64,000 nucleotides of DNA from Lepidodermella squamata (Eukaryota; Animalia; Gastrotricha), in NCBI GenBank assembly GCA_047495785.1, contig JBLDXI010000013.1, forward strand, positions 4,278,001 to 4,342,000. The letters run 5' to 3'. Each line of letters begins with the position of its first letter. Position 1 is the first letter of the stretch. Shown here piece by piece: positions 30,798 through 56,939 of this stretch. A program made the position numbers and the translations under genes. The notes under the pieces are model-generated. The model did not search any database, was not told where the DNA came from, and saw nothing but the letters and a program-made list of their open reading frames with translations.

Positions 30798-33700
30798 TTA
30801 CCAGAAACCAGCGTTTTGGAGGTAAGCGCGGTTGCCCTGGTAAGCGGCATCGATTTCAGCTTGGGTCAAAGCGAACGGCGTAATCAGGACATCGTCGATG
30901 TGGCCGTTGAAGTAGCCGTACTGTTGGTCGTTGCCGATGACGTACGGGGCGGAAGAGATGGCCAGGTAACCGGCAACATTTTCCGTGTCAACATTGACCT
31001 AAAAGCAATCAATTAAGGCTCGATTTTTTTCGGAAATTTAAAAAAGAAAATTACAGCGTTGACGTAGAGACGGACAGCGCCGCCGTCGTAGGTGACGCAA
31101 ACGTGGTTCCAGCCATTTCCGGGCACGGTGGCCGTCAAGGTGAGAGCAGAGTTCGGTTGGACGAGGTTGACGCGGGCCTGGAAGCTGTTCGAAGCACCGT
31201 TGGCCATGATGATGGTGTATTCGGTCGATGCCGAGTTCTTGTTGTTCGACAGGATGCCGCCGGCAGTTGCGCACGAGAAACCGCTGCCAGACTCGCAACG
31301 GAAGAAGGCGCACCACGACGCCTGGGTGCGCAGGTCGACGGTCTTGAGGCCGGGGACGGACTGCAGACCGTTGTTGACGGCGAGCGAACCACCGCCGTAG
31401 GCAGAAACAGTCGCATCACGCTCTGTTATAAAACAATTAGTCGTCAATTTTGTTAACAGGAATAAAATGCTCGGGGAAATTTGGTCGAAAATACCGATAA
31501 TTACCGAACCAGTTACCAGCGATTAATCCCGGAATTTCTCGGAATTTTCGGAATTTGATAAATTTTTCAGTGATATCGTGGATAATGGATGGGAAAATAA
31601 TCTTGATAGGTTTAATTTTGATAGGATTATGGGCTGAACTAAAAAATGTTGAAGCACGCGATCGGGTGGATTTGCCATCATCTGAGCATGCTATTTCTTG
31701 ATAAGTGGAAACATCTCCCAGAGCCGATGATCAGTCATCGCGAATCGAACCCGGAAAATGCAGTATTTTTCAAGAAGTAGCATGCTAAGATGCTGGAAAA
31801 TCTTCAGCAATTTCAAGTCCAGCCGATAGGTCCGGCCAATAAAGATTTTGTGGATTCAGTGGTTTCACAAAGACAGTGATAAATCGTGGGAGCAATTTTC
31901 CAGCTCAAAAACTGGCTGAGGAATCTCATGAGACTATTTGCACAACAATTTGGAAAATTTATGGAAAAATCTGAGGACATTTATTGGGAATTCAAAAAAA
32001 TTCGAACATAAATTGCTTTCAAGTAATGCTCCAATTTGGTGGTCCGGCAGCTCACCCTAAAACTTGGATAATTTAAAACCCGAATTCCAAAACTCCAAAG
32101 CACTGATGAAGCTATTGAGGCTGTCTTTCAGGGTCCCATAATTTTCTCAGGAATGTTCGAGGAGCTTTTAAATATTTACCAGTAATTTCTTATTTTTTTG
32201 AAAATAGATAAGAGTATTTTCCATTTTATACATCCACGATTTTACTGAAGAAGAACGCGGAAAAAAACAGAAAAAATGTATACGATTCAGTAATTTTCGG
32301 CATTTTTTATCCTTTTAGATTGTTTTTCTCCGAAATTTTTATGGCATTTGCATGCTACCGCAAATAATTTGAGCTGATAATTTCATCACTGGCGTCATGA
32401 AATTATTTAAAAATGCCTAATTTAAAAATTTAAATTTTTTAATTGAATGGATCCCAAATTTGAACTAGTTTGAAAATTGCTTGGCCGTCACCGAAAAACT
32501 CGTGTTGAGTAAAAATAGTAGTTTAATAAAAATAAACGCACCAGCGCCATCGTACAAGAAGGTGGTGAACTTGTTGACCGACTTGTCCTGGCTGTCGAGG
32601 TCGTACGGGATCCAAAGGGTGGCCTTGCGGTTGTCCGAGGCGGTCGGAACAACGGCATTGTCGTCGAAAACGTCGCAGCGGCAAGCGTCGAGCGAGAACG
32701 CAACACCGCTCGGGCAGTACATGAGCTCAGTGGCATGGCCTTCCTCATCGATCAGGTAGTAGGAGTTGGAGCTGGGGCCAACTGTGATGAAGGTGCCGAA
32801 GGAATCGCGGCACACGGTGGCGTTGTACTGCGTGGCTGGCGCGACGGTGGTAGCGGTGGCTGGTCCGGCTTGGACGCAGGCGTCGGTGCAGGTTGTAGAC
32901 TCGTCGCAAGAGCAGAGAGCGGCGTTGAAGCTCGATCCAACCGGGCAGCACATGCCGTACGAGGCCGAGTTGGCGCAGATGAAGAACTGACGGCAACCGG
33001 TGCCGGCGTAGCAGCCGTTCGGGTTGACGTTGGGGGCACGGCAACGATCGACGCATGGGGTGTCACCCTCGGGCATGCATGAGAGAACCTAGAGATATAG
33101 GCAAAATTGGAATAAATATAGCGGATACTGAAAACAATTTCGCATTTTTAAAATAACTTAAAAAAAATAAAATATCAAAATTTCGGGAAAATTCAAGTTA
33201 TCTATCATGAAATCCTCGGAATTGCCGGCGAAGGAATAAGTGTCCCTAGCCTGAAAATCACATGGGTGATGAGATCCTGGTTTTTAAATTCCGGAAGAAA
33301 TGGATGGTAATGCTTCCATCCACCGCGACGGCAGCGTTCAAGCTTGGTTCGATCGACAACCGGTCGCCCATTTTGGATTTTGGCCAGCGGACAGCCCCGA
33401 TCTAAACCCGATTGAGAATCTCTGGGCCATTGTCAAGCGACGACTACGTAACCGAATTCTCGCACCACGATGAGCTGCGCCAAGCTGTTCACGAATCTAT
33501 CTTATATCTCTCTTTGAGATCAAAGTAACTAGTTTCGGTTCCAAGTAGAAGAAGTCTTGGAGAGCCTTTTATTTGCTCCAGGGGAAAACTCTAAGCTAAA
33601 TGATTTCAATGCTGATTTTTTTGTAAGGTAAATTAGGGGATTCAGCCAGATCTTCAAGGCAGCTTTTCGGACTACTAAATAATTGCTTTACCTCATCGTG

Positions 33701-33925
33701 CCAGAAAGTGTTGGCAGGGCAGATGCGGCGGATGCCAATAGCTGTCGTCTCGTTGTAGTAGAAGCACTGGTAGTAGTGGTGGCACTCGGTCGGATCAGCG
33801 TACAGGTCCTTGCCGTTGCGGCTGTTCGCGTTGCTGAAGCAGAAATCATTGGCCGACTGCGATTCAGGGAATTGCGCCGCAGCTACGGCAACGACAGCCA
33901 GCAGAACAATCAACGTGTAATTCAT
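30798..33925 (-). CDS. Secreted chitin-binding (peritrophin-A/ChtBD2-like) + LamG/ConA-like protein, LamG3/Pif-like (gene A), 4 exons, about 449 aa
   Basis: Exons 33925-33692, 33088-32542, 31422-31055 and 30998-30798. Signal peptide MNYTLIVLLAVVAVAAA; Cys modules YADPTECHHYYQC...CPANTFW, CRQFFIC...CCPVGSSFN and YCPSGVAFSLDACRC; LamG motifs GWNHVCVTYDGGAVRLYVN and IG...FNGHIDDV. Confidence 0.88.
31637..31872 (-). mobile_element. Diverged copy of the palindromic MITE at 55203-55488, in intron 2 of gene A
   Basis: Shares TTCAAGAA..GCATGCTAAGATGCTGGAAAATCT, GATTTTGTGGATTC and the internal CGCGAATCGAACCCGG, in reverse orientation. Confidence 0.65.
33300..33473 (+). mobile_element. Tc1/mariner DDE transposase fragment in intron 1 of gene A
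   Basis: MDGNASIH...WPADSPDLNPIENLWAIVKRRL contains the Tc1 motif WPxxSPDLNPIENLW. Confidence 0.85.
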
Positions 33926-34889
33926 TTTTATAGTAAAAATAAACCTAATCAGTAAAATAATCGTTGAATGAATTTATTTTTTATTTCAAGATTTAGCTAT
34001 AAGAACGCGCGTGTTATTTAGTTGAAATAAAAGCGCTGCGCCGCACGCGACGTTCACCTTTTTGGGGCACGTGTGCCCGTTATTTATCGTGAAAGTTGCA
34101 TCACAAGGCTTGAAAATCCCAGTTTGACGCGAAAAACAGGGCGGGCATTTCGGATGGCTGTCATCTGAAAAATCAGGAATAATGGGTCGCACTTTTAGCT
34201 ATTAAGAATGGTTTAAGAAGCTTGAATTGGGTCAACATTCTGATACAATAATGGCCTATACTTTTTTCAAAAATAAAAACTGGAAGCTAATTTTTCACTG
34301 AAATCTCAAACCTAAGATACCACAAATAAAATAAAAGTATGTCGGATTCTGATATAACCCCTCTATAACTGGATTCCAGGTCCAACTAGTTTTATAGATT
34401 AGTTGGCAGAAAATTATATTTTTCCTCAAAGTACCTATTTTTCAAGACATTCTGACATTGGGAACATTTTCATCGAAAAATTCTATCACTACTAGTACCT
34501 TAGCTTTCAGGCAGGTCATTCATCAAATTGCAAAAAACTGGGTCATCGAAGGTATGATTCAGTGGTTTGTTTTTGCAGCTATATCAGCATCTCGTTTTAA
34601 AAATCCCGAATTCTCAAGCATTTCTGAGTATTGTTGGGTTTTTTCCGCAATTTTCCGCTGGATTTCTTGCTTTTTAACTGGACTCTTGATATTTTCCCGC
34701 AGTTATCACAGCTATCATAAACTAGGATGATGAGCATAAAATAGGGCAATGAAACAGGTTGAAATTGTGATCTGTAACTAAATAGGCTATTGGCGTGCAT
34801 ACTTTTATTACTTCGGAATAATAAATTATCATCAATTGATACTGAAACCAGCAATTATTTCGATTAAAATGATTTTCCTCGCGCACTCA

Positions 34890-36871
34890 TCAGTTTAGTA
34901 AAAAGAAGCCTCGCGACACCAGAAATTGTCGATTCCCAGTGAAATGAGCGTTAATTTCCTCCTGCGTCATTTCGAACGGCGTGATCAGGATGTCATCGAT
35001 GTGCCCATTGAAATCGCCCAGGTGCGGATCTGTGCCAATAATCAGTGGGGCGTGACTAGTGTACAGCGTTCCGTTTATCAATTGAGCATCTACCATGTCG
35101 GAATTTTGGTACAAGCGTAGGATCGAACCGTCGTACGTCACGCAGGCCTGGTTCCAGCCGTTCTGTTGAGCTTTCAACGCGGCGTTAATTGGTCTGTTGC
35201 CAATTGGCCGCCAGTAAACAACTCGACCGACGAGTTTGTTGAAACGCCGAACGCCAATCGATATGGAGTAGTCGGCGTTACGAGGGTCAAGGCTGTTCGA
35301 TAGCAGGCCACCTGCCTCACCGCATAAATGAGGAGTATCCAATGGGCCGTTGGCGCACCTAAAAAAATACAAAAAATGTAAATAAAAATAAATAAATTCG
35401 ATTCGAAACTTAATCAAATTCACAGATAACCGAAAAAAATAAAGAGGGTTTACAAAATTGTCGAACCAAAAATATTGAGGTTCCGGGCTAAATCTAAGCA
35501 CTCTTGGGAGGATTTTATCGAAATTTGGTGCTGGAACCCTAATTTTTGGGTATGCAGGAAGCTCAACAATTTAAATTGTTGGATGAAGTTGATTTTTCAA
35601 TTTTTTTTAATAAGCAACATATAGCGTAATCCGGTACAACTTTGAATAATTTATATTGAATATTGAATAATATTGAATAATTTTGATTAAAATATTTTAT
35701 AATTTAGATATATGGTTTTTTAAATAGCGCAAACAATTACTTGAAAAATAAGCAGATCGAAAATTTGTTTTGAAAATCCGTTGTTTTGAGGTCGGTTAGG
35801 ACAACGTAGCTGTGATTCAGAGCCAAACTACCGCCGCCAGTAACTGCCGACGTTCTCGGATCTCTCGTGGCACCGCTCCGCATCGAAACGTGGTGGCCAT
35901 TGACTGAATGATCAGTCACGTCGGAATCAAACGGCATCCAAATAACAGCCTTCCTAGATTGCGTCAAATTTGTCCGTCCCGAGTTCGACTCAGCTTTGTT
36001 GCAACGGCATAGCAATAAATCGAAGTAAAGAGATGGTGGACACGGCTGGATGGAGCTGCCTTTATAAAAACCGAAATAAATCCGAAAAAATCGGGGGAAA
36101 ATCATTGCTCACCCAGGCTGAAAAAACAAGAAAAATTATTCAAAAAAGATGAAAAATTGAGTTGAGTCAAATTTTTTAAGGTATTTCTAATTATATATGG
36201 AATGATGTAGAATTAATAGGCGATTCGTTCTAGATATAGCTGGAAATACGTGAAAAAAAATCGAAAATTTACTAAAATGCTGCAGGGTTGTCTTTAACGG
36301 CTGCGAGAACATTGCCACCACCGTCCTTGCAAACTGTGTCGTTCAAAGTGATGCTTGCTTCCGGCACGACAGCGTTGGCCAAGCCTCGAATCGTGCAATC
36401 CTCGTTACAGGATTTCGATTTTTCACAGTTTAAACGTGCTGGGTTAAAGGCATGGCCTTCAGGGCAGCACTGGCCTTCCGTTGATTTGTGTTTACACGAG
36501 AAGTACTGGCGGCAGTTGGAGCCGGGGTAACGGCCGGCTTTTCGAACGTCTTCATCTAAACAGAAATCTTGACACGGTATCGGACCTTCGGGTAAGCATT
36601 GTAAGAACCGGTCTTGCCAGAAGTATTTCCCTGGGCAGCGGCGCCGGTAGCCGAACGCGGCTGTTTCATTGAGGAAAAAACATTGGAAATAAGCTGAGCA
36701 GTCGGTTGGATCGGCGTATTTGTCTAGAAAATTGCGACTTTTCGCCCTTTGCCGGCAAAACAAATTTGGATTGATCACTTGAAGATCGAACTCTGTTTTG
36801 CGAGGTTTATTGGCTGGTATGGCTCCGATTGAGGCCAAAAAAGTCGCCAAAGTCAATAGTAATAAATGCAT
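34890..36871 (-). CDS. Secreted chitin-binding + LamG protein, LamG3/Pif-like (gene B), 4 exons including a 5-nt microexon, about 463 aa
   Basis: Exons 36871-36273, 36117-36113, 36059-35741 and 35358-34890. Signal peptide; YADPTDCSAYFQC...CPGKYFW; CRQYFSC...CCPEGHAFNP; CPPSLYFDLLLCRC; GWNQACVTYDGSILRLY; FNGHIDDI. Confidence 0.85.
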
Positions 36872-37226
36872 GGCAAATTTTGAATCTTGAAAATTATTTT
36901 GAAAAATTAAGGGGGAATTTCAAGTCGCGTGCAGCTCAGCGTTTTATCGCGGCACGCGCTTTGTATGGTCACCACATACGTGATCCTAAAAATAGAATTT
37001 AAAATGGTTAATGGTTTTTACCTTTTTGTCTATTTCGAAATGTCATTTCTTAAATTAGAATTAGTGCTCTAACCTCTAACTCGTAAAATATAAATAAGGA
37101 GACACAATTTCGTTAGAATTTGGAAATTACTGAAATTTAGAAATTGATGAGCTTCTCTCACGAAGTCTTTTTCCCAATTAATGGCCTGTATATCACAGTA
37201 ATTTTTTCCAACCCAATTTCAAAGAT

Positions 37227-37281
37227 CCAGCCCAAGTTCCAACCCAAGTTCCAACAAAGTTCCAACAAAGTTCCAACCCAA
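37227..37281. repeat. Short tandem repeat, 11-12 bp unit (core AAGTTCCAAC), about 4-5 copies
   Basis: CCAAGTTCCAACCCAAGTTCCAACAAAGTTCCAACAAAGTTCCAACCCAA. Confidence 0.8.
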
Positions 37282-38725
37282 TTACTAAATGCTAAGGAGT
37301 TCAGGTTAGATCTGGGTAGCGCAGCCCTACTTTAGCGGTTATAACGGTTATTAAGTATTAGGTGAAAAAACCTTGATACTTGATATTCCAAGTCATTTCG
37401 GTAAAATTGAGAAACATTTCAGATCAGGAAACAAAAGTCCGAGCTTCTGCCACCATTTCATCAATTCATTTCTAACTAATCGCTTTTTGATTTTCTATTA
37501 AATAAATTCGACCATCCTTTTCATTGAAATATCGGCAAATCAAAGCCAATTCGCCCGCTCGTGGAATCAGCGAGTTTCGAGTAGAACTTCGATAGCGTGA
37601 TATGTTAAGGTTTTACGCCTTAATCATATATTTTTCAATTATTATTTTTTCTTAGCAATCATTTCCTTGGTTTTGTTGGTCACTGAAAATCGAATATGTT
37701 GTAATTTCTAATGAAAATAATTTCCGCATATCGCTGACCGCATCGAATTGAATAGTTTTGGAATTCTCAAAACATAAGGTGGATTTAAATTTCGAAATCG
37801 AACAAAATCCAAATATCCCGTAATTTGCGACGTGAGTGACAATCGAGTTCTTAACTGGCAAGGCTCGAACATCTTTCTTTTATCAAGTTGCTTTTATACA
37901 TATGATTGGTCTGAATGTAGAGGGTGAATTTTTTTGCAGGCGCAAAAAACTGCTACAGAGAGTCGAAATTATGTCGCAGCGGCCGAATTTAGGGCGGGGT
38001 GCTTCAACAAATATCCTATATTCTTCACTGGCTTTCAAATGGAACCAAATTTGAGGAGATTATGGTTCATCTTGATGTGTCCGAAAATAGGTTGCCTATA
38101 ATTTCGGACATTACGATGACTAAACAATAAAGAGAAAATCAACTATTTGAAAATAAGCTACAGGTAGCCAGTTATACAGGTATAGCTAGGCCGCCTCTTC
38201 AGCTTTGGTACTTGGCCCTTTACCCTGTCTCTATCCAACATGCGTTAAGAATTCTTCGATTATTTTGTTCCCGAAGTTGAAGCAGCCCAACTCAGATACA
38301 GAGAAAAGACGAGAAATTTGTACTGAGTTTGAAGTTTGATTGAAATTAAAACTAGAACTGAGGCTAGACGTCTGTTCTTGTTTTCTTCAATATTTGGACT
38401 CGTGTTCTTGTTTTGTTATTTGTCTGATGTTTACTGCTATTTTTCGGTCACTTGACTACCTAATTCACGTGGTGTTGTTGATTAATCACCCGAACGTGCG
38501 ATGAACTCTACAAAAATCGCATGGCGCCGTTGGCCCCACTGGCGTCGCCGTGTGATGCAATAAACAATCGAGGCGAACGGTGAGAAAACGACACGCGACT
38601 TACCACGCGCTTTCACGCCTTGAAGCACTTTAAAAACCGTCAAAATTTCGCAAAAAAATATCAATTGAAGTTTTTAGATTTCACAATCCACCTCTCATCG
38701 AATTATTTAATTTTGCGAGAAATCG

Positions 38726-41700
38726 ATGAATAAATTGATTTTGCTAGCCTTGATGGCTGTCGGCCTTGTGGCCGTGCCTGGCACCTTTGCCAATGACGGT
38801 GAAATCGTCCAACCCGACTCGATTAGCGCCGTTCGAGGCGGCCGAAGTGGCAGTGGATCGGGCAGCGAAGAAGAAGAAAGCGGTGAAGACCACTTGGGCG
38901 TGAATATTGGCCATGATGCCTTCCTGGACCACTTCCAGAAGTTGCCGGACGAATTCTTGAACACTGCTGACCAGAAATCGGCCGACTTGTTCTTGCAAAG
39001 CTCGCGCCCGTGCTGCTCGCCCGACTTCATTTTCGTCATCGACATCAACGACGAGAACGGCTTCACGCGCGAAAACTGCGAAACCCACATTCGCGAGTTC
39101 ATCATCGCCGTGATCAAGACGGCGTGGAAGAACAAGTGCGACCAGGTCCGCACCGCCGTTGTCGAGTACGGCAGCATCGGCCGCATCCGCACCAACTTCA
39201 CGGCTTTCACCACTGTCGAAGCTCAGATCCAGTACTTCCGCAAGTACACTCCTGGATCAAGCCTTGGTCGCGATAGCAATGCCCTGGTAAATTTCCAATT
39301 TCCAATTAAATTAAATTTTAATTTTAAAATTGAAATCTCAGTACATTCCTAATATAAAATAGCCTAAAATAGCTGGATCTTAAAGAATTTTCAAGGTCGA
39401 AGTAGCTGCTGCAAGGTCTAAAGTTTGGCCTTGAGAAATTAAAATTTTCAAATTTGTTGAAATTTTTGGTTAGGAAATTTGAAAAAGCTCATGATTTCGA
39501 TGATTCACGCCTTATTGCATTTTTTGAAAATTTTTAATTTTATAATCGCTCCGAATATTCTGACCGTCTTTAAAAAGTTTTCCAGATTTAAGCACTGATT
39601 TTCTGAACCTGGCTTTTAATTTTCCCGAATTTTTATCATTTTTTTAGGCTGGATTCACCGGTGCTAAGAAGCTGTTGCTGGAACCTGCCCGCGGTCGTCG
39701 CGCCAGCAGCAACGCGTTCGTTTTCTGGCTCACCCAGTCGAACCCTACCCAGCCGGCCAACCTGCAAGCCTACGTCAACACCTACATCAAGCCAGAAGCT
39801 TACTCGATCGTCGTCGCCGTCGGTGATGAAGTCGACTTCTCCCTGGTCAAGAAGTACGCCACCTCCTCGGCTTTCGCCTTCGCCGTCGATAACATCATCG
39901 ACTTGGTTGGCAAATGCTCCGAATTCTACTTCGACTACTGCCCCAAGCCCAGGTATGAAAATTTCAAAATATTGTCAACTTTCTAGTCTAAAAATTGAAA
40001 AATGAAATTTCAAATTTCAAATCCATAATTACAATTGAGGTAAAAAAGTAAGATTAAAAATTGAAAATTTTGAAATTTTTGAAATTTTAATTTTTTCTAA
40101 ATTATTATAGGACCACCACGACTAAGGCGACTACCCGTACTACGACCACCTTGTTCAACCCGCCCGCGACCACGACCACTCGTTCGACGACCACTATGAC
40201 TACCAGGCCAAAGACCACGACTGCGACCACCCGTACGACCACCACGCTGTTCAACCCGCCGGCTACGACCACTACCCGTTCGACTACCACCCGAACTCAG
40301 CCGACGACGACGACCACCACTAAAACTACAACCAAGACTCATCGCACCTACCCGACCACGACTAAGGCGACCACGCCCACGACCACGACCAAGGCGACTA
40401 CCCGAACAACGACCACCCTGTTCAACCCGCCTGCTACTACGACCACGACCAAGGCGACTACAACCACGCATCACCGCACCAAGCCGCCAAAGACCACCAC
40501 CCATAAGGCTACAACCACTGGCCGCAACCCGGTTACAACCACGACGCACAAGTACACGCACAAGACTACGACTGCGGCTCGTACTACCAGCCGTCTGCCC
40601 GACGCTACCACCCCGCTGCCGCCGTCCGACTTCTGCTTCCAGTGCCGCATGCGCCGCAACCACAAGGATCTGTACGCTGATACGACCGACTGCCATTACT
40701 ACTACCAATGCTTCTACTACAACGAGACCTACGCTGTCGGTATCCGCCGCAAATGCGCTGAAGGCCTCTTCTGGCACGAGGAGGTTCGTAATTAAATTTC
40801 AATTTTTTCCAAAATTTTCAAATTTTTTTTATAGATCCTGCAATGCATGCCCGAGGGTGATGTCCCCTGCGTCGACCGTTGCCGCACCTCTGGCCTGGTC
40901 TGCTACGCCGGTGTTGGTTGCCGTCAATTCTTCGCCTGCGCCAACACTGCCTCGTACGGTATGTGCTGCCCGGCTGGAACCCGCTTCAACGAAACCTCGT
41001 GCGGTTGCGATGAAGATGCTACCTGCACCTCGTCCTGCTCTCAGGTAAATTTTCACAAATAAAAATCTTTTTTAGGAATTTTTCAGTTTCAACAAAATTT
41101 TAAAGGATTCAATTATTTAATTTTAATTTTAATTTCTATTTTTTTTTCTGCTATTTTTGAAATTTTAAAATTTTAAAAATTTAATTCTATTTTTTTCATT
41201 TTTTCTGCAAAAATTTCAGCACAAAATTTAATTTTTCAATTTTTTAAAATATGATCAGAATTTAATATCCTATCCTATTTCCTTTGCTTATAGCAAGGTC
41301 CGGCTGTTGGAACCACTGTCGCCCCGGCTCAACAGTACAACTCGACTGTCTGCCGCGATTCGTTCGGAACCTACATCTCGATTGTCAACGGTGAAGACAA
41401 CGCCTACCAGCTGTTGGACGAAGAGGGTCAAGTGACCGAGAAGCAGTACTGCCCTGAAGGCATCGCCTTCGACCTGGTCACGTGCCGCTGCGACATCGAA
41501 AACGGCGCCACCCTGCCGCCGTCCGAAATCAAGCGCCGCGCCATTCTCTGGATCCCATTCGACTCCGACGCCAAGGACTACTCCTACATGAAGTTCGCCA
41601 CTTTCGTCTACGACGGCGCGCAGGTTGTCACCAACACGGCTGCCCAGGGCGGTGGTTCGCTGTTCGTCAACGAGGGCCACGTCGAAATCCCCGGCATGAA

Positions 41701-42302
41701 GACCTACGACCTGCGCAACCAGGCGTCGTGGTGCGCCTTCTTCCGCTGCGAGTCCGGCAACGGCTTCTCGTGCACCATCCAGGGCGGTGTTCTGTCCAAC
41801 AACAAGGACGCCACCTCGTCCGAGTACACCATCATTCTATCGAACGGCGCTTCGAACACCGTCAACGGCCGTGTCCACTTCTGGAACCCGGTTGGTCCTC
41901 AAACCGTCAACTCTGCCATCTCTGGCACCCCGGCTAGCGGCTGGAACCACGTTTGCGTCACCTACAACGGAAACGCCCTCCGCCTCTACGTCAACGGAGT
42001 GAGTTCCAACGTTAAATAATTTCCCCAAATTTTCATCGAATTTTTAATAATTTTAAAAATTTTTAAAAATATTTAAATTAATTTTTTTTTAATTAAAGGC
42101 TAACACTGATACCGAATTCGTTGGTGGCTACCTGTCCATTGCCCACTGCCCGTACGTCATCGGCCACGACCAACAGATCGGCTACTTCACCGGCCACATC
42201 GACGATGTCCTCGTGACCCCGTTCGAAATGACCGTCGAGGAGATGACCGCTCACCGCGACGGCAACCGTGGCTACCTGCGCAGCCGTGGCTTCTTCCCTT
42301 AA
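38726..42302 (+). CDS. Pif/BMSP-like secreted protein: signal peptide - VWA - Thr-rich mucin-like linker - chitin-binding modules - LamG (gene C), 6 exons, about 885 aa
   Basis: Exons 38726-39286, 39648-39952, 40111-40783, 40835-41044, 41294-41998 and 42099-42302 are phase-consistent. VWA motifs DFIFVID...VRTAVVEYGS...IVVAVGDEVD. The Thr tract contains RTTTTLFNPPATTTT three times. The C-terminal half is closely paralogous to gene A. Confidence 0.9.
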
Positions 42303-42794
42303 GCGACGCGTCGAAAAGCTTACATCTCTAGTATTATCTCGATATAAAAAGTTTATTAGCCGGTGTGAATAGCCGGTAAAGACTTGTATAAAGAAAATGT
42401 TGAAAGATTGATCAAAATTCTATATGCTCAAATGTTGTAGTACTTATTTCCTAGTTTATGCGATTGCTGATTTTCAGCTTGTGATAAAAGCAAGATGGAT
42501 TGAATAAAAAGCACAGTTTTACACGGTGTTGTCATTTTTTGAGAATCGACTAGGGCCAAAACATTCAAATTCATCGAACGCAGATTTGAGTTCGAGATTG
42601 TTAAATATCGGGTCTAGAGGCGTTCCAACGCTTTAGTTGAGCGTCGTGGCGCTACATTTCGATTCTTCATTATTCTTATGTAGATTGGTACTGATGCCCT
42701 CCCTGAACCTGAACTTTTCGAATATTGGGTTCCATTGGGTTGATATTGGAAAAATAACTGATTTGTGGAATCGATACTTTTAATCGATATCTGT

Positions 42795-43898
42795 GAAATA
42801 TACTTTAATTGGCATCTAATCATTTTTTTCTGCATCTAATATCTTTTTTCCATATCTAAATCTTTTTTTCGCATCTAGGCATTTTTTCTACAGCTAATTC
42901 TACTTTTTCTCACATCTAATTTAAAAATAGCTGGAATGACTTCAAAAAAATTGAAAAATGATTCAGCGCGTTTTTCCCGATAAGAACATAAGAAACATAT
43001 GTTTCGTTGCCAGAACATAGGTAAATCGCTTTATTTAGCGAAAAGAAAAGAAAAACATCAATTTAAGGCTTTCCCAGAGCCATATAATGATTCCCAGTGT
43101 AGATGAGGTTGATAATTGGCTTTCGCCCACGTTGACCGTTGTTTATTTTGATTGTAGCGGTCGGCTCCGTGTGAGAGTGCACGGCGATGTTGATGTTCTT
43201 CAGGTAACAATCGCATATAATGCATCGTTGCCAGCCCAGAACCCTGGCACAGCTAGTCATGCTTCGAAAACGACCGCCACGTGAAGAATCTGGTGAAGTT
43301 GCCCTCTTCTTTTTCTTCAATTTATTTTTGATTTGAATGATTTTTGAATGATTTGATTTTGATCAGATTTGAATCTAGCGATTGCTTCCTCCCACGTCGA
43401 ATCAGTTACTCGGAGCTTCTCGAAGTATCTAATGTTTTTACCCCTAGTGGGCTTTTCTCCAACAACGGTATCATCCGATGACGATACTACCGTTGAAGGA
43501 GACGAAAAAATGAGTTGTTTCATGATTTGAGCAAATGAGCAAATGGGCCGATTCAATTTTCAACGACTGATGTGGAGCTGGAAAATTCGCGTGAGGCACG
43601 CGCTAAACATGACTATTTACTACGCCTTTCGCACGTGCATTCTTCTATTAACATTTTCCCACGTGCCTTTTTCCGCGCGCCTGATCTGGCAACGAAACAT
43701 ATGTTTTCTTATCGAGAAAAACGCGCTGAATCATTTTTCAATTTTTTTGAAGTCATTCCAGCTATTTTTAAATTAGATGTGAGAAAAAGTAGAATTAGCT
43801 GTAGAAAAAATGCCTAGATGCGAAAAAAAGATTTAGATGTGGAAAAAAGATATTAGATGCAGAAAAAAATGAATTAGATGAATATTAAAGTATGATCC
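42795..43898. mobile_element. Non-autonomous Mutator/foldback-like element with about 220-bp TIRs and an 8-bp TSD (ATATCTGT)
   Basis: Arms 42795-43014 and 43685-43898 are near-perfect reverse complements built from about 20-bp CATCTAA-T(n) subrepeats. ATATCTGT flanks both ends (42787-42794 and 43899-43906). The internal minus-strand relic RGKNIRY...TWEEA ... C..C...HSH resembles a MULE N-terminal zinc module. Confidence 0.8.
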
Positions 43899-45171
43899 AT
43901 ATCTGTTCTGCAGGCAGTAGATTCCAAGAAACTCTGTAAATTTTTCAGTGAAGACGTGAAACTCTAAAACCCACATTTCGAAGAAAGAATCTACCGCTGA
44001 AACTCCACATTGAGATTGGGAACTTGGGACAATGTATAGTGAAAGATCCAACATTCCCGACTAAGCCGGTGAACGTCAAAAGCCAAGTAATTGGCATTCT
44101 AAAAACAGTCAGCGGTTTCAGATGGATCTTGGAATATTGAGTTGGATGATTATAGTTTCGAAACATTCAAATCGACAGGGTTTTTTTTACAGCTTATTAA
44201 TACAATTTATCTGAAACCTGAAATGGACTTGGCCGAAGTTTTGCCTGTGACTTGGTGGCATGCTTTACTTCACCCTTGGAATTCCGTAATATAACGGTCA
44301 AGTTGCGACATATTTGGGGAAAGAGCTGGATCTTTTTGAATATTACATAAATATTCATTTCGATGCTTGAAAAATCCCATGAGTAAAATGTTTAGAAACA
44401 ATCGTTTGAGTTCATTGCGAATTGCGAATTTCGACATCAAGAGTTGATCCATGCTACCTGGCCCGTTCAATGTTACTTCATACGCCTAAATTCATTCTTC
44501 GTTTTCTTCTCCCTTGCCACCTTAGCGAATCCTACCAAGGAAGATTCCCGGAGGCCATCATAGCCATAAACGATTATAGCGCCCTACTCGTTTTATTTTG
44601 ACTCAGAGTGCCGCTAAAATTCATCGCGCATGCCGAAAATAGAAAGAGCTCACACCGATTAAAATCACGCGCGCAAAATCGACGGTAAATCAATAAAAGG
44701 TGAAAAACAAAGGTGTACCATGGCATTTTAATTAGTTCTCAAAACTGCCTGCAAATGACAATCAGAATCTTTGTATATACAGTAGTCTACTGTATATACT
44801 TAAACTGGCGAAATCGGCCTTGTTCTGAATTCGGAAGATTAAATGTTTGCCTTCAGGTGACTGAGGAATTCGGCTTCAGCCTGAAAATCGAACATTCTAG
44901 ATATTCAATATTCCATCGCCGAACAATTTACTTATTTTGACACCAGCGAACGACCCACTATATGCCTCATATGCAAAAACTTATTTTTACTTGGAAAATT
45001 TGACTGGATTGAGCTAAAAAACATTTTTTATTACTAGTATCTAATTCCCGCCAGTTAGATCGATCTATGTCGTGTGGTAGACAGGTCAAAATAATGGCAC
45101 GAGCTTGATTGAAAAATTTGGTAAAAAAAACCAAAAAGCATTTGATATTTTTTATTTGATTGTAATATGAC

Positions 45172-45774
45172 ATGGCCAAAATCCAGCTAATTCTTCTTAT
45201 TATTTTCGCTGCCTCGACAGTAGTTCATGCGAGACGGTATAAACAGCACCACCATTCCGAGCGCTTAATTTTTGTTGTCGATTTCACGGATGACATCGGT
45301 TTCAGCCGCGACTACTGCGAGTCGAATCTGCGGCATTTCATGAGGGAAACTATCAGAGACTTTATGGACAAAGGCGATGTTCAAGTTGCAGTAGTCGAGT
45401 ATGGATCCCAAGCAAGGGTAGCTCTCAAGTTTGACAACTTCGAAAGTGCTGAACAACTCGATAACAATTATCAATGCGGATCGAATAATTTATTAGGACC
45501 GATTTCGAACGCGGCTGATGCCTTTCTAAAGGTGAAAACCTTGATTAAGAGAAGTTCTCTAGGCCGCCGGTCTACTGATAACCACGTGACTGTTTTATGG
45601 CTGGTTCACTCGACTCCGGAGAATATTCGCGCGATGGATGCTGTAGTCGATAAGCTGAAAGTAACTTATCAGTCAGCCCTGCAGATTATAGTCGTCGCTG
45701 TTGGGGACGAAGTCGACGATAGCGAGATTGAAGATGTAACCAGTAGTCAGGACTTGTTCTTTCACGTGAAATGA
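45172..45774 (+). CDS. Secreted VWA-only protein (gene D), single exon, 200 aa, paralogous to the VWA of gene C
   Basis: Signal peptide MAKIQLILLIIFAASTVVHA. LIFVVDFTDDIGFSRDYCE / VAVVEYGS / LG..SNA / IIVVAVGDEVD align with gene C. AATAAA lies about 20 nt after the stop. Confidence 0.8.
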   Translation: MAKIQLILLIIFAASTVVHARRYKQHHHSERLIFVVDFTDDIGFSRDYCESNLRHFMRETIRDFMDKGDVQVAVVEYGSQARVALKFDNFESAEQLDNNYQCGSNNLLGPISNAADAFLKVKTLIKRSSLGRRSTDNHVTVLWLVHSTPENIRAMDAVVDKLKVTYQSALQIIVVAVGDEVDDSEIEDVTSSQDLFFHVK

Positions 45775-45879
45775 TTAAATGTTGACAAATAATCAATAAA
45801 TATTTCATATAATATAAATCGGCTAGTAACATGAATTTTACTATACCTAATCAAAAACTATCAGGTACACGCAGGAATT

Positions 45880-46310
45880 GTAATGGGGAAGGTAACGGTG
45901 GTCCAAGTCACCCGAAACACATATTAGATGCTGATGGGGTGACTTTGTACCACTCAAATATCGAAGCCGATAACGTAAAGACCCCATGAGTGGGCTACTG
46001 TTGGATAGCCTGTAAACAGAGTGGTTCGAAAATTACACTCAATTTTGACTTCTATCATGGATTCCATTGGCTAGTCACCCAAATTCTACCAGAAATCGAA
46101 CTTTTCAAATTTCCCCTAACTTTACCTGTCATTTTTACTCGGTGACAACTCGGATTGGTGTAAATTTTACACATTTATAGGCCTGATTTTCCTTGGGCTA
46201 TCCCACTCATGGTGTCTTTGCCTTGCCGGCTTCGATATTTGAGTGGCCAAAGTAAAAAATCTCAAGTCACCCCTTTTTGACACGTCAAAGTCACCCCAAA
46301 TTACGTTAAT
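45880..46310. mobile_element. Probable MITE relic with dispersed AAGTCACCC / GGGGTGACTTTG subrepeats
   Basis: GGGGTGACTTTG (about 45937) and its reverse complement CAAAGTCACCCC (about 46286), plus further AGTCACCC copies. Ends are not resolved. Confidence 0.35.
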
Positions 46311-46537
46311 TGAAATTTTCCAGAATTCCGAAAAACATTCATGAAGGGAATGGTAATGAATTATGGGAATTTTGATCCACTTCAATGAGATACCTAGAAT
46401 GATCTCAAAGGGTATATAGGTTGAACTCAATGGCGTGGCTGAATCCTGCGTGATTGTTTTAAACCCAATTAAAAGTGATGAATAGTAGCTTTAGCTGTCA
46501 CTCATTTTTTCAACCTTTTATTTTCTTCAGTTGTTAG

Positions 46538-47378
46538 GTATTAGGCCACATGCAAATAAAAGAGGGATAAGAAGCCGAAAAATGAAAAGGCAGTTACCTC
46601 CTAATACTATAACGATCACACGTAAATTAATCAAAATTTAAAATGGATAAAGTTATTGTAAGCAGAATCCACTTCACTGCTTCTTTCCTGTTTCTTTTTG
46701 ATTCGATAAGGGGTTAGCGGAAAGCGGAACCAAAATTGCTCGTAAGCGAAACAAATTGTTGTGAATTTTCTGGAATTTCTGATTGATTCAAGCAAATCCA
46801 AATATATTATGTTGATATTCGCCGTGAGATATTCAATGCAAGGCCTGGCCATCACTTTGAGAAATCAATCGTGATCTAAAAAAATTTCGAAAATGAGAAT
46901 TTATTCAAGTTCTCGTTTGGTGCCAAGTCCTAAAATTTTGTTTCGCTAATAGATATTCTGTTGGAAATACAAGACAGCATCCGGAAATCAACGCAGGACT
47001 TTTTGAGACGTTGGAGAGGGCGATCCAGGAATGACTACAACCAAGGGTGGCTGAAATTGAATTCATTCTCACACATATCACACATTTGATTAATCAAATT
47101 GAAGCTCCGCCTTTTATTCGACTTATTTTCGAGCTTTTACAAAGTACGAATATAATAAACAATGGAAAAGGATATTAGGAATGAACAAGTAGTCGTAACC
47201 TATCAGAAGAATAAAGCATAGATCACGTCAAGCTTCAAGGGTGTTGTTCATAAACATACGCCAAATTTTTTGAACTTTAAATAAAATTTGATCACAATTT
47301 TCACATAATTTGCGAGACTTATACATTATCTACGCTACGTTGACTGTGAAAAAATTGAAAAACAATAATAGAGTTTAC
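46538..47378. repeat. Duplicated ABCB 3-prime flank (paralogous to about 58819-59538)
   Basis: Colinear blocks from GTATTAGGCCACATGCAAATAA through GAATGACTACAACCAAGGGTGGCTGAAATTGAATT to ACAATAATAGAGT are shared between the two copies. Confidence 0.9.
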
Positions 47379-50300
47379 TTGTTTGATGAGGGCTGCTGAG
47401 CGCAATCCGAAATTACATTATCCGAACTTACAGCAGGCACGCGATCTATCAACTTGAAAATTTCAGCAAGGGCTATTCTAGCCTTTTGCAGGTCAGGAGT
47501 CATTGCATTGGCTTGGCTTATCGTAGAGGCACTGAATATTATTGCCAATAGCCTGTAATAACCTCCATTCAATTGGTTCAAAATTATAGTAAAATTTTTG
47601 ATTCAGTCTTACGCAGCGTAGACACTCTGGAAATCCGTCGAACCTTGTTTAACGAAAACAGCGCCAGCGTAGAAAGCTGCGGCCAGTGCGGAAATCATTG
47701 CAGCTTCAGTGAGACCGAAACAGAATGCGGCGACTTGGATCTTCAACATTTCCCGTCTGTGGCGACTGATAAGCGGTGCTTTGAACATGTCGATGAAAAC
47801 TCGGTATAAACCGAGAGCTGTCACGGTTCGGATATTGCCGGTAAATGCAAACAGCGTTTGAGTCGCTTGTTCGACAAACCTGTCTTGTTTTGCGCCGATT
47901 GCTTTGGCCTGCACAATGCCACCGATAACGAGAACAAGCATGAAGGCTATCATGATGAGCGTGACGCGCCATTCGTGAAGGAAACCAATGACGAGAGCGG
48001 CGATTATGCAAGAGATCACCTGTGCAATTTGCGTCAAGCTCGCTATAGTTGCGTCCTTCACAGCTCTGGCTTGGATTGCCAGCCGCGAAGTCAGCGCTCC
48101 AACAGTGTTTTCGTCTTTGTCGAACCACGACAGGTCCTGACGTAGCATCGATTGGAACGCCAACTTAAGAATTCTCGCCACCAATCGCCCACCCTATTGA
48201 TGAATCAAAAATCGCATGGCTCATGTAACAGTATAGAAGAAGAAATCTAACCCCGAATGCAACCATAACATGCATAAGAAAAACACCGATAAATTTAGCG
48301 CCACCGATCGCCACAAATAAAAGCGAAACGAGCTGGCTTTGTCGATTTCGTTCGCCTTCATCACAATCCCTAAAAATAGGCGATATAAATTGTTTGGAAA
48401 CAGCAGAAATATGATTACGTTAATGCTACGCGCATTCTGGGGAGAATGATCGAAACGAAAGGCCAAATACCCCCGGCAACGATGGCGCCTAAATGATAAG
48501 AATTGTCATATATATAAGGTTGGCACTTTCAATGCTCGCGTACCTAGAACGGCCAAGAGAAAGAACGGATATTCCGGAGCAGCCATTTTCCAAAGTCGCA
48601 GTGAAGAAAAATGTTGTTTAACAAGATCTTTTTCTTGCAGCTTCATTTCGCGATTAGACAATTCAGGCTTGTTGCTGCCTACGGCTTGCTTCGCCTTAAT
48701 TTCGTTTTTAGCGTTGATGAACTTGCTATTCTTCGTCAAGGCAGCTCTGCGTTCCTTAATATCATTCAATGTGGTCTCAATATCGTTAACGCCCCCGCGA
48801 CCTTGTTGAGCTTCGACCAGCTTCGCGTAGATTCCTAGCTTGGCGATGAGTTCGGAATGCGTTCCACTTTCAGCTACTGAACCGTTGTCGATGACGACGA
48901 TTTTATCAGCGTTCATGATGGTGGAGAGCCGGTGAGCGATAACAATTGTGGTACGGCCAGCTTTGGCTCGCTCAAGCGCTTCTTGAACAATCGCTTCAGA
49001 CTCAGTATCCAACGCAGACGTGGCTTCGTCCAGCAAGATTATTTTAGGATTCCGTACAAGGGCACGGGCTATGGCAACGCGCTGCTTTTGTCCACCACTC
49101 AACTGAGCCCCATGCTCGCCGACCATTGTTTCGTAGCCTTGGGGTAGTTTCGTAATAAAATCATGAGCGTTCGCCAATTTCGCTGCGTTTTCGACATCCT
49201 CACGGGTGACATTCGGGTAGCCGTAGCGAATGTTCTCGAAAATCGTTGTGCCGAAAAGTACCGGCTCTTGGCTGACGCTGCCTATCATCGATCGGAACCA
49301 GAAAATGTTGTAATCGCGTAAATCGCTGCCATCGACGCTGATCCGTCCAGACTGGGGGTCATAGAAGCGTTGAAGCAATTGGATAACAGTCGATTTACCG
49401 CAACCACTCGCCCCCACCAATGCAACAGTGGTACCCGGCTCTACGGTTAGCGATAGGTCTCGCAAGATTTGCACACCGGCAGGACGGGTTGGGTAGCGAA
49501 ACGAAACGTACTTGAATTCTATGCGGCATTTAAATTGAGCGTGATCATGCTTGATCCCTTGCCGTGAAAATGCATCGATCGGCGGTATGCGATCGATAAT
49601 TTGAAATACGGAGTAGGCTGCCGAGCAGGCTGCCGAGCTGGCAGATGTCAAGGCCTGTAAACTAGTGACCGACATGCCAAGCGAAAACGTGACCATTATA
49701 ATCGCGAACAACGTAACAGTTACTGTGCCGATATCATAGCCAATGTTCCTGGCATTGATCAGATAAATACCGAAAGCGTAGGAGCAGAAAATGGTGAAAC
49801 ACGTAAGACCCATCCTTGCTCCGGCCAAAGCGCCTTTCTTAGTGCCAGCAATCCGAGCGTCGTTCAGGTTTGAGGCGTAGCGTTCAACCTCACGATGCTG
49901 AGCCCCGAATGAAGCGACAGTCCGAATCGAGCTGAGAACCTCCTGCGCTATCGAGCCAGCTTTCGAATAGGCTTCTGTCTCGTTTTTAGACTGTGTATAA
50001 GTGATTCGAACCATCAGACTACCAGCGAAGGCAAGCGAAAACAACAAGAATAACAGGATGGCCCAGCTGAGGTTCCAGCCGATGAGGATGCTGACAATCA
50101 CGCAGCCGACGAAAGAGCCGACGGTTTGGATGCACAACGCAACTTGGTCCCCCATGCCTTTCTGCATAGAGGCAATGTTCTCGGCGAATTGGCTTGTCAA
50201 AGCTCCGCTGGATTGTTGATCGTACCAGGCAATGTCCTGTCGCAGGAGATTTCGAAAAAACGCCTTCCGAATGCGCCGGATTTGAAACTCGGCGGCAACG

Positions 50301-50920
50301 TTCCATGTCGCCGATTGAATGTAGCCGACAAGCAGCGAAGCGGAGGCGATTACTGCAGGGATTAAGAATAATCAATTTGCTTTTCTTGATCAATATCAAT
50401 GGGGCTTACTGATAATAATTTTAGTTACCGCAGTCATATTATTCATGAAATCCACTAGTCTTCTAGCGTTGATCGGATCGGTCATGTTTGCAAGTGGCAG
50501 GGTGGATGAATTAGAACCGCATCCGCCATATTGCTGTGGAAAATAGTCGAAATCGAGACCTTCCTTTGCGACCCAGCTGAAAGCGAAAACCATTAACGGC
50601 AACACGGCGCCATGAACCAGCGCTGCGATTGATCCTGTTATGATCAAGCTTAAAATTTGTTGTTCTCATGGGCATGGGCAAATATTATGTACCAATAATG
50701 TATAAGAACCGATCCAGCGATGAAGAAAAGCGAAACTAAGAGTAAAGAAATGGAGAAGACTCCTGGTAAAAAGGGTCGAATAATTTACCAATTCACGCCA
50801 TCTGACTGTCGGCTTTTCCTCCTTCCTCCCACCAGTTTCAACATTCGAGCATTTGTACTTCTTTTTCCCCCGAACAGCAGCATCATCGTCAATTTCCGGC
50901 GGTAACAGTTTTTCTGGCAT
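47375..50920 (-). CDS. ABCB1/P-glycoprotein paralog lacking NBD2 (TMD1-NBD1-TMD2), about 8 exons, roughly 1050 aa; may be a young pseudogene
   Basis: Exon layout matches the neighbouring full gene, and I found no stop or frameshift after splicing. NBD1 is intact ([39 protein letters not shown]). After TMD2, IDRVPAVSSDN runs directly into AQQPSSNK-stop. Confidence 0.75.
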
Positions 50921-51124
50921 TGAAAAACATTAAAATTATCGCAGCTAAATGTTGAGAAAATTACCTGCTCCGATGTGTTTCGGTTTTTTCATGTTTATAA
51001 CTTCGTCCCGCTCAAACGCGCCGTTTTCGTGAACTATTCAGGCGATGAAAGCGAGAACAAAGCTGAAGGGCTATATTGCATAATTATTAACCTACCTTGC
51101 AGTTTCATATCAAACTTCCCATTT

Positions 51125-51689: not shown

Positions 51690-51703
51690 GACCCTATAAT
51701 ATC

Positions 51704-56929: not shown

Positions 56930-56939
56930 TTGTCACCCC

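What the first reader, a model, noticed from the sequence alone, without database searches (positions are those of the whole stretch)
30798..45774. Cluster of Pif/BMSP-like matrix genes holding the fused protein and both of its halves as separate genes
Seen: four adjacent secreted-protein genes in 15 kb. A and B are chitin-binding modules + LamG, D is VWA alone, and C is VWA + Thr linker + chitin-binding + LamG. D aligns with the N-terminal part of C, and A/B align with its C-terminal part. Established: VWA + ChtBD2 + LamG is the architecture of the molluscan shell-matrix proteins Pif/BMSP, and ChtBD2 + LamG without VWA is the related LamG3 type. From memory, the CRxYxxC...CCPxG second module and the degenerate MIDAS (DINDE, DFTDD) also resemble Pif97. 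No Asp-rich Pif80-type mineral-binding tract is present. Inference: a modular chitin-scaffold toolkit for a hard part (jaw, chaeta, cuticle, scale or shell) in an animal with tiny introns. The locus may record fusion or fission of the VWA and chitin-binding/LamG halves.
Basis: partly seen in the sequence, partly recalled or inferred. Interest (0 to 1): 0.85.

Follow-up and report, generated by a model that had tools for sequence, protein, structure and literature searches.

The report
Pif/LamG3-type chitin-matrix gene cluster
Four neighbouring genes of a tiny freshwater animal (very probably the gastrotrich Lepidodermella squamata) encode secreted chitin-binding matrix proteins built like mollusc shell proteins; the "half" genes look like cut-down copies of the full-length gene, a pattern already described in oysters.

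Summary
Genes A (449 aa) and B (460 aa) have a signal peptide, two CBM_14 modules, a Cys module and Laminin_G_3. Gene C (885 aa) has a VWA domain, a 172-aa linker that is 52% Thr, and then the same cassette. Gene D (200 aa) has a signal peptide and VWA only.

The cluster continues past the window with two more fused genes. The genome holds about 50-70 cassette loci and arrays of tandem VWA domains.

The halves look secondary, not ancestral:
- D's VWA lies in a clade whose other members are all fused genes. Its reading frame stops two codons past the exon-1 donor position of its fused paralogues.
- A alone among VWA-less genes shares an intron otherwise found only in VWA-bearing genes.
- B belongs to a cassette-only lineage.
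- In one paralogue the VWA and the cassette have discordant histories.

The host is not a mollusc. Oysters have a published Pif_LamG3_cluster formed by the same duplication and domain loss, so this is a new member of a known kind in a new, non-mineralising phylum.

Kinship with mollusc Pif, expression and tissue could not be tested. This scan has noted Pif-like genes elsewhere in this genome.

The parts
30798..33925 (-). Gene A, LamG3-type, 449 aa. It has a signal peptide, CBM_14, CBM_14, a Cys module (X) and Laminin_G_3. Exons: 33925-33692, 33088-32542, 31422-31055, 30998-30798.
   Evidence: Pfam hits are. It is 60-65% identical to the cassette of C.
34890..36871 (-). Gene B, LamG3-type, 460 aa, with the same cassette. 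Exons: 36871-36273, 36055-35741, 35358-34890. It is the more divergent of the two, about 40% identical to C.
   Evidence: In the cassette tree it groups with the VWA-less locus L013 at 99/91.
38726..42302 (+). Gene C, the fused type, 885 aa. It has a signal peptide, VWA, a Thr-rich linker, CBM_14, CBM_14, X and Laminin_G_3. Exons: 38726-39286, 39648-39952, 40111-40783, 40835-41044, 41294-41998, 42099-42302.
   Evidence: Relatives carry the same order in nearly uninterrupted reading frames: P0004 in L001 and P0006 in L051.
39011..39890 (+). VWA domain of C, split by a 361-bp intron (39287-39647). Its MIDAS is degenerate (D-I-N-D-E).
   Evidence: It is 41% and 39% identical to D and about 50% identical to E. 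It sits in the 99/98 VWA clade.
40111..40621 (+). Mucin-like linker of C: 172 aa, 52% Thr and 10% Pro.
   Evidence: Composition is. This parallels the poly-Thr insert of the bivalve PifN subfamily (PMC11291548, section 17).
40622..41044 (+). The two CBM_14 (peritrophin-A) modules of C, separated by a 51-bp intron (40784-40834).
   Evidence: An intron at this boundary occurs only in VWA-bearing genes and in A.
41294..42302 (+). The 4-Cys X module (CB-like) and the complete Laminin_G_3 domain of C, with a 100-bp intron (41999-42098).
   Evidence: Pfam is. X has no Pfam hit even at E = 10, but it resembles the C-terminal half of CBM_14-2 (E 0.002). In the model of relative P0003 the LG part has high pLDDT, and its fold neighbours are ConA-like sugar-binding modules.
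45172..45774 (+). Gene D, VWA-only, 200 aa in a single exon. It has a signal peptide and a VWA domain with degenerate MIDAS (D-F-T-D-D).
   Evidence: Pfam VWA E 1.5e-8. The AlphaFold model has pLDDT 84.7 and pTM 0.82. Its nearest solved folds are VWF A3, mussel byssus PTMP1 and collagen VI N domains.
45766..45800 (+). The 3' end of D. GTGAAA followed by TGA lies where paralogue F has its exon-1 donor (GTGAGT) and where E also has an intron. AATAAA lies at 45795-45800.
   Evidence: The sequence comparison is and the downstream sequence. No relic of linker or cassette exons is found in 45775-47400 or 42303-45171.

Best explanation
**What it is.** A-D are tandem members of a very large family of secreted chitin-associated matrix proteins. 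The host is a small-genome spiralian, very probably the gastrotrich Lepidodermella squamata.

**The four genes.**
- C has the full, probably ancestral layout: VWA, an O-glycosylated Thr stalk, two CBM_14, a CB-like module and a ConA-like LG domain.
- D is a truncated duplicate that keeps only the signal-peptide and VWA exon. It ends by reading through the old splice donor.
- A is probably a fused-lineage gene that lost its VWA and stalk.
- B belongs to an older cassette-only (LamG3-type) lineage.

**Inferred mechanism.**
- The paired CBM_14 modules fasten the protein to chitin fibrils.
- The LG jelly-roll binds a further glycan or protein.
- The metal-independent VWA recruits other matrix proteins.
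- The stalk sets the spacing between these parts.
- Full-length, cassette-only and VWA-only forms would then act as cross-linker, chitin coat and soluble VWA competitor or adaptor.
- The likeliest site is the chitinous pharyngeal cuticle; body scales or the egg shell are also possible.

**Shown:** the domains, the gene models, the family size and the direction of domain loss for D.

**Inferred:** chitin binding, partners, tissue and homology with mollusc Pif.
For: **Domains and gene models.**
- Domains.
- Gene models.

**Family size and spread.**
- 102 exon matches of the cassette, about 50-70 loci, genome-wide.
- 38 of 49 sampled loci carry the whole cassette.
- 59 matches to the VWA profile, including tandem VWA arrays on C74 and C33.
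- Fused paralogues E and F lie 3.5 and 12 kb past the window end. More fused genes are in L005, L004a, L025 and L035.

**D as a truncated copy.**
- D falls in a 99/98 clade with C, E, F, P0004 and P0006, all of them fused. All outgroups are fused too.
- D stops 2 codons after the donor position shared by E and F.
- D's model folds confidently as a VWA domain.

**A as a fused-lineage gene.**
- A shares the CBM14-1|CBM14-2 intron. That intron is found otherwise only in the VWA-bearing genes C, E, L005, L004a and L025, and in none of 33 other loci.
- A tree that holds A together with the fused genes scores 6 log-likelihood units better than the free search.

**Relatives.**
- Relatives from one metagenome have both fused and cassette-only genes.
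- A polyadenylated cassette-only mRNA contig exists.

**Chitin context.**
- One chitin synthase in the genome.
- The gastrotrich pharyngeal cuticle is chitinous (PMC5431905, Table 1 footnote).

**Host.**
- The genome is 121.2 Mb in 151 contigs; this window averages about 43% GC. The published assembly is 122 Mbp in 157 contigs at 43% GC, in a study that also sequenced a second species (PMC11660948).

**Precedent.** The oyster Pif_LamG3_cluster (PMC10543319).
Against: - There is no RNA evidence for any of the four genes.
- D's position inside rather than beside the fused clade is not significant (AU p 0.30). D also has a long branch (1.25), so it could be decaying.
- The inner branches of the cassette tree are unresolved.
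- No mollusc, brachiopod or annelid sequence could be retrieved. The best 20 relatives are all unnamed metagenome proteins, so homology with Pif rests on the shared order of modules only.
- Chitin binding is inferred from Pfam family membership alone.
Confidence: 0.62

Rival explanations
1. The proteins are components of a gut or mucosal barrier, or immune lectins. This would be a peritrophin or intestinal-mucin-like role, or pattern recognition of fungal or prey chitin, rather than building blocks of a cuticle or hard part.
For: - CBM_14 with a Thr-rich mucin stalk is the layout of insect peritrophins and intestinal mucins (established knowledge).
- The LG fold neighbours are sugar-binding lectin modules.
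- The family is huge, tandemly arrayed and fast-diverging.
- According to earlier notes of this scan (s1-374010, s1-407803), the cassette is also fused to proteases.
Against: - VWA plus LG is not part of known peritrophins.
- The same four-module order is that of the mollusc matrix proteins.
- There are no expression data either way.
Confidence: 0.2
2. The locus preserves the original fusion. On this view a D-like VWA gene and an A/B-like cassette gene were the ancestors, and C arose from them by exon joining.
For: All three forms lie within 15 kb. The AU test cannot exclude D as sister to the fused VWAs (p 0.30).
Against: - Every VWA outgroup of D sits in a fused gene.
- Fused genes occur in both major cassette clades and in relatives from other samples.
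- D ends at an exon boundary of the fused genes.
- A carries an intron typical of the fused genes.
- The architecture is reported across lophotrochozoans and in two chordates, so it long predates this locus (PMC10543319).
Confidence: 0.04
3. D is a non-functional relic: a dead first exon left by a partial duplication.
For: - D has the longest branch in its clade (1.25 against 0.3-0.7).
- The donor is lost and the frame ends by read-through.
- No relative of D was found in metagenome contigs.
Against: - The 200-codon frame is intact and has a signal peptide.
- AATAAA lies 21 nt after the stop.
- The VWA model is confident, with pLDDT 84.7.
- At about 37-40% identity to its paralogues it is old, yet it has no stop codon.
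- VWA-only members (PifG) exist in a limpet (PMC11291548).
Confidence: 0.22
4. The resemblance to Pif/BMSP/LamG3 is convergent. On this view the same common extracellular domains were shuffled together independently in gastrotrichs.
For: - The mollusc study itself concludes that VWA-CB proteins arose at least twice by shuffling (PMC11291548, section 19).
- A search of 1.84 billion representatives with the X+LG exon listed no clearly animal relative outside this family among its best 150. Of the 30 hits I checked, 20 were unnamed metagenome family members and 10 were bacterial-type multi-Laminin_G_3 proteins.
Against: The same order of four modules recurs (VWA, CB, CB-like, LG at the C-terminus), including a poly-Thr insert as in PifN. 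The host is a spiralian, the clade where this architecture is reported.
Confidence: 0.25

Closest known systems
Mollusc 'ancestral Pif' / PifN subfamily (VWA, poly-Thr insert, CB, complete LG); PMC10543319, PMC11291548
   Same: Gene C has a signal peptide, one VWA, a long poly-Thr insert, CBM_14 plus a CB-like module, and a complete C-terminal Laminin_G_3 without an acidic insert.
   Different: - Gene C has two clear CBM_14 modules.
- The host is a non-mineralising gastrotrich.
- No shell or any matrix proteomics exists for it.
- Sequence kinship is untested.
LamG3 proteins and the oyster Pif_LamG3_cluster (PMC10543319, section 10)
   Same: - A and B are CB + LG without VWA.
- They lie in one cluster with fused genes.
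- The cluster arose by tandem, partly inverted duplication followed by domain loss.
   Different: - This is an independent cluster in another phylum.
- It also holds a VWA-only gene.
- It is part of a family of about 50-70 loci.
BMSP (tandem VWA domains + CB + LG) of mussels
   Same: Elsewhere in this genome, arrays of tandem VWA domains of the same subfamily lie upstream of cassettes (C74 489-533 kb, C33 1355-1361 kb).
   Different: They are not in this window. Their number of VWA domains appears larger. I did not build gene models for them.
PifG subfamily of Lottia gigantea (Pif/BMSP-clade VWA proteins without CB and LG; PMC11291548)
   Same: D is a family VWA without CB or LG.
   Different: Four of the eight PifG proteins carry CCP domains. 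D is a bare VWA made by truncation at an exon boundary.
Insect peritrophins / intestinal mucins
   Same: They have CBM_14 modules joined to Thr-rich mucin stalks, and they are secreted and bind chitin.
   Different: They have no VWA and no LG domain. No link to the gut is shown here.
VWF A3 domain, mussel byssus PTMP1 and collagen VI N domains (structural neighbours of D)
   Same: They share the matrix-type VWA fold. VWF A3 binds collagen without a working MIDAS (established knowledge). PTMP1 is a mollusc matrix protein.
   Different: Sequence identity is only 15-19%. D's ligand is unknown.

Membership tests
Pif/BMSP family in the broad sense ('ancestral Pif': VWA + CB + LG) | N-terminal signal peptide | tested here: met
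   Hydrophobic N-termini were seen by inspection in A, B, C and D. Residues 2-19 of D are modelled as a helix ahead of the domain. No signal-peptide predictor was available.
Pif/BMSP family in the broad sense ('ancestral Pif': VWA + CB + LG) | One or more VWA domains at the N-terminus | tested here: met
   In C this rests on homology to D, E and F. Pfam VWA passes the cut-off in D, E, F, L005, L035 and L025.
Pif/BMSP family in the broad sense ('ancestral Pif': VWA + CB + LG) | CBM_14 chitin-binding domain(s) downstream of the VWA | tested here: met
   C has two CBM_14 modules. The first passes the cut-off at 24.2 bits. The second is below it at 17.0 bits but is 65% identical to the above-cut-off module of A.
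Pif/BMSP family in the broad sense ('ancestral Pif': VWA + CB + LG) | A degenerate CB-like module after the CB domain | tested here: inconclusive
   The 4-Cys X module resembles the C-terminal half of CBM_14-2 (E 0.002), but it has no Pfam hit even at E = 10.
Pif/BMSP family in the broad sense ('ancestral Pif': VWA + CB + LG) | C-terminal LG (Laminin_G_3 / ConA-like) domain | tested here: met
   Laminin_G_3 is found at E 2e-10 to 3e-11 in A, B and C. The fold was confirmed in a relative.
Pif/BMSP family in the broad sense ('ancestral Pif': VWA + CB + LG) | The VWA (and LG) group with mollusc Pif/BMSP in a phylogeny | not testable with these tools
   No mollusc sequence could be fetched (searches were blank). 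The only hint is a weak structural match, TM 0.37, to a mollusc VWA+CBM_14 cluster.
Pif in the strict sense (Pinctada Pif97/Pif80) | LG split by an Asp-rich low-complexity insert, and dibasic cleavage into two products | tested here: not met
   The LG is uninterrupted and there is no acidic tract. A KRR/RR motif does lie before the LG in C, E, F and L005, but cleavage is unknown.
Pif/BMSP family (functional definition) | Found in a shell or hard-part matrix, or expressed in the secreting epithelium | not testable with these tools
LamG3 (CB + LG, no VWA) | Signal peptide, CB domain(s) and LG, with no VWA in the gene | tested here: met
   For A and B, the start codon and signal peptide directly precede CBM_14-1. 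There are no VWA matches upstream in the window.
Peritrophin / intestinal mucin | Only CBM_14 repeats with or without mucin linkers, and located in the gut | tested here: not met
   LG is present in A, B and C, and VWA is present in C. Location was not tested.

The most novel reading that the evidence does not exclude
The gastrotrich genes are true homologues of mollusc Pif/BMSP/LamG3. With about 50-70 cassette genes, multi-VWA giants and protease fusions beside a single chitin synthase, a non-mineralising animal would then hold the richest known repertoire. That would show that the original job of the 'shell-matrix' Pif architecture was to organise an unmineralised chitinous cuticle. The family would evolve by repeated fission and by swapping of VWA and cassette halves between paralogues, as seen in D, A and L005.
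Probability: 0.4. Interest if true: 0.55.

Novelty: new member of a known kind. Interest (0 to 1): 0.36.

Why it matters
Pif, BMSP and LamG3 are central proteins of mollusc shell formation, and their origin is debated. One study places it in the mollusc ancestor and another in the bilaterian ancestor, with a first function that was not mineral-related. A compact, culturable, non-mineralising spiralian with a large and varied set of these genes offers an outgroup in which that older function can be studied. The truncated and recombined copies here show, at exon resolution, how the domain combinations change. The cluster itself, however, repeats a pattern already described in oysters.

Tried and rejected
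**Reads**
- After that, no reference or letters covering 42038-42081 were sent to any search tool.

**Sequence and feature searches**
- The search for homologous proteins found only the queries' own family or nothing, with P0008, alignment A1 and alignment A3 as queries.
- The protein-atlas search gave only generic Laminin_G_3 and VWA clusters.
- Two scans of metagenome contigs, with D and with alignment A5, were blank. Alignment A4 was too divergent to scan.
- Pfam on the X module gave nothing.

**Genome access**
The multi-VWA genes therefore rest on match coordinates only.

**Host markers**
- No nematode SL1, no nematode cuticle-collagen N domain, no arthropod R&R domain and no cellulose synthase. 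The host is therefore probably not a nematode, arthropod or tunicate. In some searches the controls did not ring either.

**Other**
- A search for relic exons after D found none.
- Complex prediction of D with A or B was not run. I do not claim they bind, the halves are separated by a 172-aa flexible stalk in C, and A and B have no single reference.
- The run that holds 54% of the sampled words (X2) fits a transcript assembly. Exons make up about 70% of the stretch. This could not be checked.

Full report
**1. What is there**

Six-frame reading and splice modelling give four intact genes.
- A (minus strand, 33925 to 30798, 4 exons, 449 aa) and B (minus strand, 36871 to 34890, 3 exons, 460 aa) each encode a signal peptide, two CBM_14 modules, a 4-Cys module that I call X, and a complete Laminin_G_3 domain.
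- C (plus strand, 38726 to 42302, 6 exons, 885 aa) encodes a signal peptide, a VWA domain split by one intron, a 172-aa linker that is 52% Thr, and then the same cassette.
- D (plus strand, 45172 to 45774, one exon, 200 aa) is a signal peptide plus a VWA domain.

Pfam, run exon by exon, confirms CBM_14, Laminin_G_3 and VWA. The one weak point is the second CBM_14 exon of C, which scores 17.0 bits against a cut-off of 22.1. It is 65% identical to A's above-cut-off module.

The VWA exons of C are 41% and 39% identical to D. The cassette of C is 60-65% identical to that of A and about 40% identical to that of B.

There is no Asp-rich tract.

**2. The wider locus and the family**

The window is G000:C13:4278001-4342000, in a genome of 121.2 Mb in 151 contigs.
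- Two more fused genes lie 3.5 kb and 12 kb past the window end, beyond two ABCB1-type genes. These are E (in L002) and F (in L003). Both have VWA, a Thr-rich region, the cassette and the final LG exon.
- About 66-72 kb past the window end lie a further fused gene and a cassette-only gene (L004a and L004b).
- The X+LG exon of C has 102 exon-level matches in the genome, about 50-70 loci. Of 49 loci sampled, 38 carry the whole cassette in order.
- A profile of the VWA subfamily finds 59 matches. These include long tandem VWA arrays next to cassettes on contigs C74 and C33, which recall multi-VWA BMSP.
- Earlier notes of this scan report the same cassette fused to cathepsin L and to trypsin-type proteases (s1-374010, s1-430036, s1-407803). 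I did not test these.

**3. Relatives elsewhere**

A full HMMER search of 1.84 billion representatives with the X+LG exon found only about 25 proteins matching over their whole length.
- All 20 that I looked up come from ENA or JGI metagenome or metatranscriptome assemblies and carry no name. Ten of the remaining listed hits that I sampled were bacterial-type proteins with multiple Laminin_G_3 domains.
- Among the relatives whose domains I scanned, some are fused and some are cassette-only.
- In one sample, two almost intron-free fused genes and one cassette-only gene occur (L001, L051, L053).
- One cassette-only contig ends in a poly(A) tail, so that form is a complete mRNA.
- The continuous frames of P0004 and P0006, running from VWA into LG, are the best available support that the exons of C belong to one gene.

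**4. Fusion or fission**

*VWA tree* (11 domains).
- D lies in a 99/98-supported clade with C, E, F, P0004 and P0006, all of which are from fused genes.
- The outgroups (L005, L004a, L035, L025, P0008) are also from fused genes.
- The AU test cannot show that D is nested rather than sister to the five fused VWAs (p 0.30). Either way, its ancestors sat in fused genes.

*The 3' end of D.*
- E and F have an intron directly after the last VWA strand (...FFE | VED..., ...FYH | IDN...).
- D reads FFH, then GTG AAA TGA, where F has its donor GTGAGT.
- AATAAA follows 21 nt after the stop.
- No trace of linker or cassette exons is found downstream.
- D is therefore a first exon that survived a partial duplication or deletion and now ends by reading through the dead donor.
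- It still models as a confident VWA fold (pLDDT 84.7). Its closest solved folds are VWF A3, mussel byssus PTMP1 and collagen VI N domains.

*Gene A.*
- An intron at the CBM14-1|CBM14-2 boundary occurs in C, E, L005, L004a and L025, all of them VWA-bearing, and in A. It occurs in none of 33 other cassette loci.
- A tree that holds A with the fused genes of its clade is 6 log-likelihood units better than the free tree.
- A is therefore probably a fused-lineage gene that lost its VWA and stalk. This is suggestive, not proven.

*Gene B.* B lacks that intron and pairs with the VWA-less locus L013 at 99/91. It belongs to a cassette-only lineage.

*Gene L005.* Its cassette is sister to that of C (100/95), but its VWA is sister to that of L004a (96/94). 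Forcing C and L005 together in the VWA tree is rejected (AU p 4e-6). The two halves are therefore exchanged between paralogues.

**5. Host**

- Marker searches argue against a nematode, an arthropod and a tunicate, and a chitin synthase is present.
- The published assembly is 122 Mbp in 157 contigs at 43% GC, from a 2024 study that also sequenced C. elegans (PMC11660948).
- This matches the genome here: 121.2 Mb in 151 contigs, about 43% GC averaged over this window, and a best-holding run from 2024 whose study includes a second organism.
- I put the identification at about 0.8.
- Gastrotrichs are spiralians. Their pharyngeal cuticle is reported to be chitinous (PMC5431905, Table 1 footnote).

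**6. Comparison with what is known**

- VWA + CB + LG is called 'ancestral Pif', and CB + LG is called 'LamG3'. Both are reported in lophotrochozoans and in two chordates (PMC10543319).
- The bivalve PifN subfamily has a poly-Thr insert and a complete LG, as C does. Lottia PifG proteins are family VWAs without CB and LG, as D is (PMC11291548).
- Oysters have a Pif_LamG3_cluster explained by tandem duplication of an ancestral Pif followed by loss of VWA or LG.
- The present cluster is thus an independent example of a published pattern. What is new is the phylum, the size and variety of the family, and exon-level evidence for truncation and for exchange of halves.
- Features of Pinctada Pif in the strict sense (an acidic insert in the LG) are absent.
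- Whether the gastrotrich VWA and LG domains group with mollusc ones could not be tested, because no mollusc sequence was reachable.

**7. Likely working (inferred)**

- The CBM_14 pair anchors the protein to chitin.
- The ConA-like LG domain offers a second binding face. Its fold neighbours are sugar-binding modules of glycosidases, sialidases and clostridial toxin HCN domains.
- The VWA, without a working MIDAS, binds other matrix proteins, as the VWA of Pif97 does in pull-downs (PMC11291548 abstract).
- The glycosylated stalk spaces the two ends.
- Cassette-only and VWA-only products would coat chitin or occupy VWA partners without cross-linking.
- The main rival is a gut or immune lectin role. 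Only expression data can separate the two.

**8. Limits**

- There are no RNA data and no tissue data.
- The joined protein models were not sent to any search or folding tool.
- Gene counts are lower bounds, and some loci (C16 against C103) may be two copies of one region.

Noticed in passing
window 33300-33473 (+), inside intron 1 of gene A: This is a fragment of a Tc1/mariner-type transposase (Pfam DDE_3, E 3e-12). It accounts for part of the unusually long 603-bp intron.
   Followed up: partly
L005 = G000:C13:3560001-3570000 (minus strand): This is a further fused gene whose cassette is the closest relative of that of C. Its VWA is of the L004a type, with Q in place of the first MIDAS Asp. 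The halves have different histories (AU p 4e-6).
   Followed up: yes
window about 41480-41500 (C residues about 661-667) and the same place in E, F, L005 and P0002: A dibasic KRR/RR motif lies in the exposed stretch just before the first LG strand. Other subfamilies have RQC there. It is at the same position as the Pif97/Pif80 cleavage site of Pinctada. Processing is untested.
   Followed up: no
G000:C74:489900-533000 and G000:C33:1355500-1361100: Dozens of tandem VWA domains of the same subfamily lie upstream of cassettes. They are probably giant BMSP-like multi-VWA genes.
   Followed up: partly
window 47375-63722 (minus strand): Two tandem ABCB1 (P-glycoprotein)-type genes separate D from the next Pif-like gene E. 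The nearer one seems shorter, as another reader of this window noted.
   Followed up: no
P0016 (metagenome relative), C-terminal 100 residues: The cassette continues into a stretch that looks like the start of a trypsin-type protease. This fits the protease fusions noted elsewhere in this genome.
   Followed up: no
They were kept out of all later search calls.
   Followed up: no
cassette loci genome-wide: Intron positions in the cassette vary a great deal. An intron at about residue 150 of the X+LG exon is common. A has a unique one at about residue 108. L005 has one inside X, B has one nearby, and F has one inside CBM_14-2. This indicates rapid intron turnover in the family.
   Followed up: partly
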